NCBI RefSeq assembly: GCF_006345805.1
Contig: NW_021831676.1
Coordinates: 1 to 34,781 of the forward strand
Length of the DNA stretch: 34,781 nt
From: Octopus sinensis
Lineage: Eukaryota
Direction of reading: 5' to 3'
A program made the translations under genes and the position numbers. Below, one piece after another: positions 10,299-10,386 of this stretch (position 1 is the first letter of the stretch; every line of letters begins with the position of its first letter). The notes below the pieces were generated by a model. That model was given only the letters and a program-made list of their open reading frames with translations. It searched no databases and was not told the origin of the DNA.

Positions 10299-10386
10299 GC
10301 GGCTGAAGAAGGCTATTGACGTACATATTACATCAATTATGCATTGATATAAACCGTCTATTAAAAGACAGAAACATATGTACCGC
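10299..10386 (+). ncRNA. Putative minimal type I hammerhead ribozyme (HHR1)
   Basis: gcgg-CTGAAGA(10303-10309)...GAAA(10371-10374)-C-ATAT-GTA-ccgc. Stem I is 4 bp. Stem III is A-U and C-G closed by the palindrome ACATATGT. Stem II is imperfect. Confidence 0.72.

What the first reader, a model, noticed from the sequence alone, without database searches (positions are those of the whole stretch)
10299..10386. HHR1: intact hammerhead core on the sense strand of the presumed host intron
Seen: complete CUGAAGA/GAAA core, GUA triplet, 4-bp all-GC stem I (GCGG/CCGC) and a perfect ACAUAUGU palindrome. Stem II is imperfect and opens with an A-A pair. Inference: because it is on the same strand as the ANKS1-like exon, it could cut the pre-mRNA if active and if the transcript spans it. 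Established: intronic HHRs are known in other animals.
Basis: partly seen in the sequence, partly recalled or inferred. Interest (0 to 1): 0.7.

Follow-up and report, generated by a model that had tools for sequence, protein, structure and literature searches.

The report
Truncated transposon-borne hammerhead ribozyme copy
This is a short, 5'-truncated copy of an octopus mobile element that carries a hammerhead self-cleaving RNA motif; its catalytic core is intact but one supporting helix is broken, so it is a real ribozyme relic that is probably inactive and not a regulator of the host gene.

Summary
At 10299-10386 (+) the sequence reads GCGG|CUGAAGA|61 nt|GAAA|CAUAUG|UA|CCGC, as described.

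It is not a chance match. A descriptor with no stem requirement finds 5 such motifs in the window, against 0.012 expected. The other four are at 11151-11264(-), 32603-32732(-), 33241-33326(-) and 34106-34186(+). The five covary in helices I and II. A covariance model built only from the other four finds HHR1 at 31 bits (E about 4e-4).

All copies share:
- GAAAC, a 4-nt palindrome, then N-U-H;
- a long helix II (54-103 nt);
- a tail ending in a CTyATTTTG-like motif, four of five next to or close to simple-sequence repeats.

One copy has an inverted, 5'-truncated partner.

I read HHR1 as the 131-bp, 5'-truncated 3' end of a hammerhead-bearing retroelement, most likely Penelope-like or Penelope-dependent. 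It sits in a (TA)n tract about 23 kb upstream of, and on the same strand as, an ANKS1B-like PTB exon of an octopus.

HHR1 is the worst-folding copy. Its helix II closes with probability 0.001, against 0.39-0.998 for the others. Competing helices beat the active fold by about 21 kcal/mol. Helix III is of the dimer type.

Cleavage of the pre-mRNA is therefore unlikely. This is an ordinary member of a known kind.

The parts
10265..10288 (.). (TA)12 microsatellite abutting the 5' end of the element
   Evidence: read directly
10289..10419 (+). 131-bp element: a 5'-truncated copy of the hammerhead-bearing repeat, single copy in the window at the sequence level
   Evidence: bounded by (TA)n and (AT)n; 3' terminal motif shared with sister copies
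10299..10302 (+). helix I, 5' strand (GCGG)
   Evidence: covaries across copies
10303..10309 (+). core box CUGAAGA (C3-A9, N7 = A)
10310..10370 (+). helix II region, 61 nt. It runs A.A, G-C, G.A, C-G, U-A, A.A and so on. It does not close in thermodynamic prediction. It contains the 6-bp hairpin AUCAAU/AUUGAU and GUACAUAU (10321-10328), which competes for the helix III strand.
10371..10374 (+). core box GAAA (G12 A13 A14 A15.1)
10374..10381 (+). ACAUAUGU palindrome. This is the minimal helix III (A15.1-U16.1, C15.2-G16.2, loop AUAU), the dimer-type architecture.
   Evidence: 4-nt palindrome at this place in all 5 copies
10380..10382 (+). GUA triplet; predicted cleavage between 10382 and 10383
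   Evidence: position H17 in the model alignment
10383..10386 (+). helix I, 3' strand (CCGC)
10387..10419 (+). 3' tail ending in CTATTTTGATTA (CTATTTTG at 10408-10415). CAUCAUGUUUC in the tail can pair with GAAACAUAUG and sequester the core.
10420..10437 (.). (AT)9 microsatellite abutting the 3' end
11151..11264 (-). sister copy: CUGAUGA, A.A then G-C, 87-nt helix II, GAAAC AGCU G UC
   Evidence: 37.3 bits; training sequence of R2
32603..32732 (-). sister copy: CUGACGA, 8-bp helix II base, 103-nt helix II, GAAAC AGCU G UA. The element runs on to about 32484.
32802..32944 (+). inverted, 5'-truncated partner of the 32603 copy (3' half plus 122-nt tail). About 93% identical, head-to-head across a (TA)n tract.
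33241..33326 (-). sister copy: CUGAUGA, G10.1-C11.1, 59-nt helix II, GAAAC GAUC U UA. Weak Rfam Hammerhead_1 match (15.7 bits).
34106..34186 (+). sister copy on the sense strand: CUGAUGA, A.A then G-C, very stable 54-nt helix II, GAAAC AGCU U UA. Predicted cut 34182/34183.
33709..33796 (+). ANKS1B-like PTB-domain exon with AG/GT boundaries. This is context, not part of the element.

Best explanation
HHR1 is the hammerhead module at the 3' end of a 131-bp, 5'-truncated copy of a dispersed octopus retroelement family. The element is most likely a Penelope-like element (PLE) or a short non-autonomous element mobilised by one. It inserted into a (TA)n microsatellite inside a long intron of an ANKS1-like gene, in sense orientation.

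In the parent element the type I hammerhead has a short helix I, a long helix II and a minimal palindromic helix III that pairs between two copies. It would self-cleave element transcripts, probably as a dimer in multimeric RNA or with helper factors.

This copy keeps all core nucleotides. It has lost, or never had, a closable helix II, and it lacks the distal helix I extension seen in two sister copies. It is also trapped by much more stable alternative pairings. As a lone monomer in a pre-mRNA it should cleave very poorly or not at all.

Shown: the motif, the family, covariation, the flanks, the folding predictions and the strand relative to the exon. Inferred: the PLE assignment, the original processing role, and present inactivity.
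For: Family membership:
- Five intact-core motifs in 35 kb against 0.012 expected.
- Across the five, 76.9% of helix cells pair against 55.5 +/- 4.6% in shuffles (0/500). 10 of 13 pairs show double changes. Slid registers give only 27-38%.
- A model built from the 4 other copies finds HHR1 at 31.1 bits, E=3.7e-4, the best non-training hit in 77 kb. A 2-copy model gives 22.3 bits.

Retroelement signs:
- A shared CTyATTTTG-like motif at or near the 3' end. The end is mapped by the arm comparison in one copy and marked by the adjoining repeat in three.
- The HHR1 tail aligns with the 33241 copy (P=0.02), and a (TA)n run starts 38-62 nt after the cut site in the three copies tested, at roughly 0.1 chance each.
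- An inverted, 5'-truncated partner lies head-to-head with the 32603 copy. PMC8557442 describes this arrangement and microsatellite targets for PLEs.
- PLE hammerheads have a short helix I, a large helix II, an extra nucleotide after A9 and palindromic 15.2-16.2/loop 3 (PMC4209133).
- Octopus vulgaris has active Penelope families (PMC13282606).
- Decayed relatives occur in an unrelated O. vulgaris locus.

Poor activity:
- Helix II closing probability is 0.001, against 0.39-0.998 in the other copies.
- The gap from the active fold to the minimum-free-energy fold is 20.7 kcal/mol, against 6.6 and 9.1.
- Single min-hammerheads are inactive in vitro (PMC4209133).
Against: - No reverse transcriptase / GIY-YIG reading frame lies next to any copy, so the PLE link is circumstantial.
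- A different repeat family in the window carries a similar 3' tail (9172-9210 and 9483-9510, minus strand). A shared non-PLE partner is therefore possible.
- The genome is full of (TA)n, which weakens the target-site argument.
- Nearest-neighbour folding ignores hammerhead tertiary contacts and proteins, so inactivity is predicted, not shown.
- The core is perfectly intact, which leaves some room for activity.
- The family has only 5 members here, and three were found with a stem I requirement.
Confidence: 0.7

Rival explanations
1. HHR1 is an active intronic ribozyme that cuts the ANKS1-like pre-mRNA co-transcriptionally and so affects expression or processing of the host gene.
For: - All core positions are intact, with a GUA site and a 4-bp G+C helix I.
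- It is on the same strand as the ANKS1B-like exon, with no intervening exon detected.
- Intronic hammerheads exist in other animals (background cited in PMC4209133).
Against: - Helix II does not close.
- The active fold is 20.7 kcal/mol above the minimum-free-energy fold.
- Helix III is minimal and dimer-type, and there is no second compatible copy. The sister palindromes are AGCU and GAUC, not AUAU.
- Single min-hammerheads gave no detectable cleavage in vitro (PMC4209133).
- There is no Rfam match, including the conserved intronic families HH9 and HH10.
- It is one of several transposon copies on both strands, which does not point to a host-selected element.
- From my own recollection of the published literature, not checked here: even active ribozymes placed in introns often leave splicing intact.
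Confidence: 0.06
2. The motif is a chance juxtaposition of short boxes in AT-rich, low-complexity DNA.
For: There is no Rfam hammerhead hit for HHR1. The fold z-score is -0.49. The region is rich in ATAT/ACAT repeats that easily give palindromes.
Against:
- The leave-one-out model gives E=3.7e-4.
- Helices I and II covary across copies.
- The tail and 3' terminal motif are shared.
Confidence: 0.03
3. HHR1 belongs to a hammerhead-bearing short element mobilised by a LINE, like a SINE that shares the LINE's 3' tail, or to a dispersed monomer of a non-LTR retrozyme, and not to a Penelope-like element.
For: - Another repeat family in the window ends with a similar tail..CATTGATGTTCATCTATTTTGATTTG, as SINE/LINE partners do.
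- LINE reverse-transcriptase fragments are present in the window.
- No PLE reading frame was seen.
- Schistosome SINE-like elements with hammerheads are known (cited in PMC4209133).
- Animal retrozymes can occur as dispersed copies (bioRxiv 10.64898/2026.07.22.740005).
Against: - The head-to-head inverted, 5'-truncated partner with both 3' ends outward is the PLE signature (PMC8557442).
- There is no tandem array around HHR1 or the other copies, as a retrozyme would have.
- Retrozymes are now argued to be PLE derivatives anyway.
Confidence: 0.2

Closest known systems
Minimal type I hammerheads of Penelope-like elements (Cervera and De la Pena 2014, PMC4209133)
   Same: - Type I topology, with a short helix I (4 bp here).
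- A large helix II, and an extra nucleotide after A9.
- Palindromic 15.2-16.2/loop 3, implying dimeric action.
- Mostly dispersed single motifs, with some pairs on opposite strands a few hundred bp apart.
- Extreme sequence variability between copies with a conserved core.
- Microsatellite-associated insertions and inverted truncated partners (PMC8557442).
   Different: - Helix II regions are far longer (54-103 nt, against 6-8 bp stems).
- In 3 of 5 copies, HHR1 included, an A also precedes G12, so an A.A apposition separates the core from the G-C pair.
- No RT/GIY-YIG frame is adjacent.
- HHR1's helix II does not close.
Rfam RF00163 Hammerhead_1 (newt satellite 2, schistosome Sm-alpha, cricket; 235 hits reported in the giant squid genome, PMC6962438)
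   Same: Same core, type I, and a weak helix III with a palindromic loop. The sister copy at 33241-33326 aligns end to end at 15.7 bits.
   Different: HHR1 gives no match even at E<=10. The long helix II insert and the A.A step fall outside the model. No loop 1 / loop 2 contacts are recognisable.
Non-LTR retrozymes of animals (PMC7229834; bioRxiv 10.64898/2026.07.22.740005)
   Same: AT-rich short repeats carrying type I hammerheads. They act as dimers when helix III is weak, and are proposed to derive from PLE pseudo-LTRs.
   Different: Retrozymes are tandem arrays of 170-400 bp units that give circular RNAs. HHR1 and its sisters are single, with a fixed 3' end and a variable 5' end. Vertebrate retrozymes are reported as depleted from introns.
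Conserved intronic hammerheads of amniotes (HH9, HH10)
   Same: Sense-strand hammerhead inside an intron of a protein-coding gene.
   Different: Those are single-copy, ultraconserved, stably folding motifs with their own Rfam models. HHR1 is a repeat copy, matches neither model, and its conservation could not be tested.

Membership tests
Hammerhead ribozyme, type I (motif level) | Conserved core C3 U4 G5 A6 N7 G8 A9 / G12 A13 A14 / A15.1-U16.1 / H17, with helix I open | tested here: met
   CUGAAGA 10303-10309, GAAA 10371-10374, U10381, A10382; helix I GCGG/CCGC
Hammerhead ribozyme, type I (motif level) | Helix II closes directly on the core with G10.1-C11.1 | tested here: not met
   A10310 lies opposite A10370, and G-C comes only one step in, followed by G.A and A.A. 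The closing pair has probability 0.001 and forcing it costs 5.6 kcal/mol. The A.A-then-G-C arrangement recurs in 3 of 5 copies, so it is a family trait.
Hammerhead ribozyme, type I (motif level) | Helix III holds the cleavage site | tested here: inconclusive
   Only A-U and C-G pairs with an AUAU loop. The 8-nt palindrome would give an 8-bp helix only between two copies. No compatible second copy is in the window.
Hammerhead ribozyme, type I (motif level) | Self-cleavage 3' of H17 | not testable with these tools
   Needs in vitro transcription or RNA end mapping.
Rfam hammerhead families (RF00163, RF00008, RF02275, RF02276, RF02277) | Covariance-model score at or above the gathering score | tested here: not met
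   No hit at gathering score, and none at E<=10 in 1.1 kb or 116 nt.
Octopus hammerhead-bearing repeat family defined here | Matches a covariance model built from the other copies only | tested here: met
   R2 gives 31.1 bits, E=3.7e-4, full-length alignment 1-83.
Octopus hammerhead-bearing repeat family defined here | GAAAC + 4-nt palindrome + N + UH, helix II of 50-100 nt, tail ending in a CTyATTTTG-like motif next to or near a simple-sequence repeat | tested here: met
   GAAAC AUAU G UA; 61 nt; CTATTTTGATTA followed by (AT)9.
Penelope-like element hammerhead (min-HHR) | Short helix I, extra nucleotide after A9, palindromic 15.2-16.2 / loop 3 | tested here: met
   4-bp helix I; A10310; C-G plus AUAU. 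Criteria taken from PMC4209133.
Penelope-like element hammerhead (min-HHR) | Lies in the pseudo-LTR of an element encoding RT and a GIY-YIG endonuclease | tested here: not met
   No such frame lies next to any copy. The only RT fragments (about 1.4-4.3 kb) look LINE-like. Truncated or non-autonomous copies would not carry one, so this does not exclude PLE origin.
Penelope-like element hammerhead (min-HHR) | Insertion signatures: microsatellite target, inverted 5'-truncated partner | tested here: inconclusive
   HHR1 is flanked by (TA)12 and (AT)9 but has no inverted partner. The partner is seen for the 32603 copy. (TA)n covers 6% of the window.
Non-LTR retrozyme | Tandem repeats of 170-400 bp, each with a hammerhead | tested here: not met
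   No tandem or direct repeat includes HHR1, and the unit is single copy.
Conserved host intronic hammerhead | Orthologous conservation across species | not testable with these tools
   No orthologous cephalopod locus could be fetched.

The most novel reading that the evidence does not exclude
The five motifs define an undescribed cephalopod variant of the hammerhead, with a very long helix II and an A.A step between the core and G10.1-C11.1. Its sense-strand intronic copies, HHR1 and especially the well-folded 34106-34186 copy 310 nt downstream of the ANKS1-like exon, would be active in vivo with cellular help and cut the pre-mRNA of a neuronal scaffold gene.
Probability: 0.06. Interest if true: 0.7.

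Novelty: new member of a known kind. Interest (0 to 1): 0.3.

Why it matters
Hammerhead motifs carried by Penelope-like and related retroelements are already known to be scattered in large numbers through invertebrate genomes, so one more copy in an intron is not surprising.

The useful results are these:
- The motif is real and not a chance match.
- It is transposon-derived, and this particular copy is structurally crippled. It should not be taken as evidence for ribozyme control of ANKS1.
- Octopus carries a family whose hammerheads escape Rfam because of a 54-103-nt helix II and, in 3 of 5 copies, an A.A step next to the core. A census with a dedicated model would show how many intact sense-strand copies sit in genes.

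Tried and rejected
- Rfam at gathering score on the window and on L001, and at E<=10 on small slices. Only the 33241 copy gave a sub-threshold Hammerhead_1 hit.
- BLAST of the 133-nt unit against the window found no second copy at the sequence level.
- MAFFT on whole elements misaligned the cores. I switched to equal-length constructs with the helix II interior masked by N.
- The exon peptide was too short for the protein search. The padded version found nothing, and Pfam found nothing on 29 aa. The PDB sequence search did identify it.
- I tried to collect more octopus DNA. The DUF4817-like frame gave one 42-kb O. vulgaris locus. A second look-up found nothing, and the LINE fragment gave only proteins without long contigs. 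No orthologous locus and no large sample of the family could be had.
- The CTGAAGA..GAAA pair at 27970-28176 is an inverted repeat, not a hammerhead.
- The compact motif at L001 31228-31268 has a stem I made of CA/TG repeat and no palindromic loop. I did not count it as a family member.
- Tail similarity is significant only for HHR1 against the 33241 copy.

Full report
**1. The observation.**
ACATATGT (10374-10381) is a perfect palindrome. The helix II region opens with A10310 opposite A10370, then G-C, G.A, C-G, U-A, A.A. In standard numbering the cut would fall after A10382.

On its own the motif looks weak:
- Rfam finds no hammerhead at gathering score, and none at E<=10 in a 1.1-kb or a 116-nt slice.
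- The free fold is not a hammerhead and is no more stable than shuffles (z = -0.49).

**2. It is not chance.**
A second full match turned up at 33241-33326 (-) and a third, with a 3-bp helix I, at 34106-34186 (+). In all three, 6 nt lie between GAAA and UA.

In 1000 block-wise dinucleotide shuffles the expectation is 0.019 for a 4-bp helix I and 0.08 for 3 bp. No shuffle reached 3.

A covariance model built from those two copies then found a fourth copy at 32603-32732 (-) and, with its filters off, part of a fifth, 11151-11264 (-), at E=5. Reading that sequence showed the fifth copy's real 3' core further downstream.

A descriptor with no stem requirement (CTGANGA, 30-130 nt, GAAAC, 4-nt palindrome, N, T, H) is met 5 times, against 0.012 expected and a maximum of 1 in 1000 shuffles.

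**3. The five copies behave as one RNA structure family.**
I aligned equal-length constructs with the helix II interior masked (A4). Results:
- 76.9% of helix cells are standard pairs, against 55.5 +/- 4.6% when partners are shuffled (0 of 500 shuffles reach this).
- 10 of 13 pairs show changes on both sides.
- The covariation score is 0.608 against 0.239.
- Sliding the partners by 1-3 columns drops pairing to 27-38%.

Caveat: three copies were found with a helix I requirement. Helix II pairing was never part of a regex descriptor, though model R1, which first picked out two of the copies, did carry five helix II pairs.

As a leave-one-out test, model R2 was built from the four other copies only. 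It finds HHR1 at 31.1 bits, E = 3.7e-4, aligned over all 83 positions. This is the best non-training hit in 77 kb. The E-value is rough, since calibration was short.

**4. The copies are retroelement insertions.**
- The elements barely align outside the core, but a CTyATTTTG-like motif lies at or near the 3' end of each: HHR1 CTATTTTGATTA|(AT)9, the 33241 copy CTTATTTTGATG|(TA)n, the 34106 copy CTCATTTTCTGAT|(AT)n, the 32603 copy CTCATTTTGTTAAATG, the 11151 copy CTATTTGTAATG, whose end is not mapped.
- The 32603 copy has an inverted partner at 32802-32944 (+). The partner starts inside helix II, is about 93% identical, and stops being similar exactly after that terminal motif. The two lie head-to-head across a (TA)n tract. 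This maps the 3' end in that copy and shows variable 5' truncation.
- HHR1 is flanked by (TA)12 and (AT)9 and begins only 10 nt before helix I.
- A (TA)n run starts 38-62 nt after the cut site in the three copies tested, at roughly 0.1 chance each. The HHR1 tail aligns with the 33241 tail at P = 0.02.
- There is no tandem array, so this is not a retrozyme array.

**5. What kind of element.**
The window is octopus DNA:
- A DUF4817-like frame at 31382-31759 (-) is 67% identical to an Octopus vulgaris protein.
- A LINE fragment is 85% identical to an O. bimaculoides protein.

A 42-kb O. vulgaris locus (L001) holds decayed relatives:
- 32559-32646 (+), reading GTGAAGA...GAAACATGTGTA.
- 33232-33313 (-).
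- An inverted pair of 3' halves at 37488 (-) and 39912 (+).

What the literature says:
- PLE hammerheads are type I. They have a short helix I, a large helix II, an extra nucleotide after A9 and palindromic 15.2-16.2/loop 3. They are mostly dispersed singles, sometimes occur on opposite strands 100-700 bp apart, and vary greatly between copies (PMC4209133).
- PLEs favour microsatellite targets, including (TA)n, and often carry an adjacent inverted 5'-truncated copy (PMC8557442).
- O. vulgaris has active Penelope families (PMC13282606).
- 235 Rfam Hammerhead_1 loci were reported in the giant squid genome (PMC6962438).

I therefore assign the family to PLEs or PLE-dependent short elements. This is an inference. 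No RT/GIY-YIG frame adjoins any copy, and another repeat in the window ends in a similar tail, which leaves a LINE/SINE-type partnership open.

**6. HHR1 compared with its sisters.**
- Helix II folded alone closes at its base with probability 0.998 (32603), 0.997 (34106), 0.86 (33241), 0.39 (11151) and 0.001 (HHR1).
- Forcing closure in HHR1 raises the energy from -8.4 to -2.8 kcal/mol.
- In the context of the whole element, the hammerhead-competent fold lies 20.7 kcal/mol above the minimum-free-energy fold for HHR1, against 6.6 and 9.1 for the 33241 and 34106 copies.
- Two helices compete with the active fold. GUACAUAU (10321-10328) pairs with AUAUGUAC (10376-10383), and GAAACAUAUG pairs with the tail CAUCAUGUUUC.
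- The 33241 and 34106 copies can extend helix I through a distal pairing of upstream sequence with GGAGU in the tail. I read this directly. HHR1 is truncated before any such partner.
- The A.A-then-G-C junction occurs in HHR1, 34106 and 11151. It is therefore a family trait and not a lesion of HHR1.

**7. Host context.**
- The exon at 33709-33796 (+) has AG and GT boundaries. It matches the ANKS1B PTB domain over 29 of 29 residues (E = 2.6e-6).
- Searching plus-strand reading-frame pieces of most of the rest of the window (the LINE part at 1.4-4.3 kb, repeat and low-complexity pieces, and about 26-28 kb were left out) against solved structures found no other ANKS1-like exon.
- The PTB domain is C-terminal in ANKS1 proteins, so upstream exons must lie beyond the window. 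HHR1, 23.3 kb upstream on the same strand, is therefore most likely inside the same long intron. This is an inference, because transcription could not be tested.
- Of the five full copies, two are sense and three antisense. That gives no sign of orientation selection.

**8. Mechanism.**
- In the parent element the hammerhead presumably trims element transcripts. Its minimal palindromic helix III implies action as a dimer between adjacent copies. Published single motifs of this type did not cleave detectably, and dimers cleaved weakly (PMC4209133).
- In one PLE, hammerhead cleavage was not needed for target-primed insertion in vitro (PMC11167929).
- HHR1 has no compatible partner. The sister palindromes are AGCU and GAUC, not AUAU.
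- With a non-closing helix II and strong misfolds, the expectation is little or no cleavage of the pre-mRNA.

**9. Verdict.**
HHR1 is a genuine but structurally degraded, transposon-derived hammerhead copy, a new member of a known kind. The family's long helix II and A.A step are modest variant features worth a genome-wide census.

Noticed in passing
window 34106-34186 (+), element about 34064-34243: This is the best-folding hammerhead copy (helix II -24.5 kcal/mol, z about -4 to -5). It is on the sense strand, starts 310 nt downstream of the ANKS1-like exon, and its predicted cut is 34182/34183. If any copy here cleaves the pre-mRNA, this is the better candidate.
   Followed up: partly
window 33241-33326 (-) and 34106-34186 (+): Two dissimilar hammerhead copies lie head-to-head about 780 bp apart and bracket the ANKS1-like exon (33709-33796). 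Three full copies plus one partial lie within 1.7 kb around this exon.
   Followed up: partly
window 32484-32775 (-) and 32802-32944 (+): A full hammerhead element and its inverted, 5'-truncated partner, about 93% identical, lie head-to-head across a (TA)n tract. The point where similarity ends defines the element's 3' end (..CTCATTTTGTTAAATG).
   Followed up: yes
window 11151-11264 (-): Intact-core hammerhead copy with an 87-nt helix II and a GUC site, convergent with HHR1 about 770 bp away. Its 5' side abuts the long CAT/ATG repeat.
   Followed up: partly
window 9172-9210 (-) and 9483-9510 (-): A different repeat family, which contains 64-bp tandem units at 9539-9861, ends in CCATTGATGTTCATCTATTTTGATTTG. 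This resembles the HHR1 tail CATCATGTTTCTATTTTGATTA and may mean the two families share a mobilising partner.
   Followed up: no
window 11283 to about 15300: About 4 kb of CAT-type trinucleotide repeat and its variants. GC skew is near -1, and the region gives artefactual reading frames of more than 1300 codons.
   Followed up: no
window about 15400-17700: A minisatellite-like array gives the repeated peptide LDALPNANHFTMWTGYFLCSTNTDEVSFGKVFIAGCPSKCQPLHNVDWILFMQHKYR in several frames.
   Followed up: no
window about 1400-4300 (+): Frame-shifted reverse-transcriptase fragments (..HQGSALSPLWF.., ..LLYADDLALIA..) of a LINE-like element. They give a weak RVT_1 hit and are 85% identical to an O. 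bimaculoides protein.
   Followed up: partly
window 31382-31759 (-): 126-codon frame, 67% identical to O. vulgaris DUF4817-domain proteins, probably a DNA-transposon remnant. Pfam itself gave no hit on this copy.
   Followed up: partly
window 27968-28020 and 28125-28180: An inverted repeat of about 50 nt per arm contains CTGAAGA...GAAA look-alikes. It is not a hammerhead and may be a MITE-like hairpin.
   Followed up: partly
window 10440 to about 10800 (+), with similar sequence elsewhere in the window: A SINE-like repeat (GCGGTAAGTAGCTTGTTTACC...GGTTCCGGGTTCAGTCCCACTGCGTGGCACC...) starts directly after the (AT)9 that follows HHR1. The reading-frame lists suggest further copies, for example near 5.1, 19.6, 24.4 and 27.6 kb, but I did not map them.
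   Followed up: no
L001 31228-33313 and 37488-39923 (O. vulgaris OX597823.1): A cluster of decayed hammerhead-family motifs: 32559-32646 (+) with C3 changed to G, 33232-33313 (-) and 31652-31735 (-). There is also a compact motif at 31228-31268 and an inverted pair of 3' halves (GAAACAATTGTY + GGATTTATAAGGTGAGATC..) about 2.4 kb apart.
   Followed up: partly
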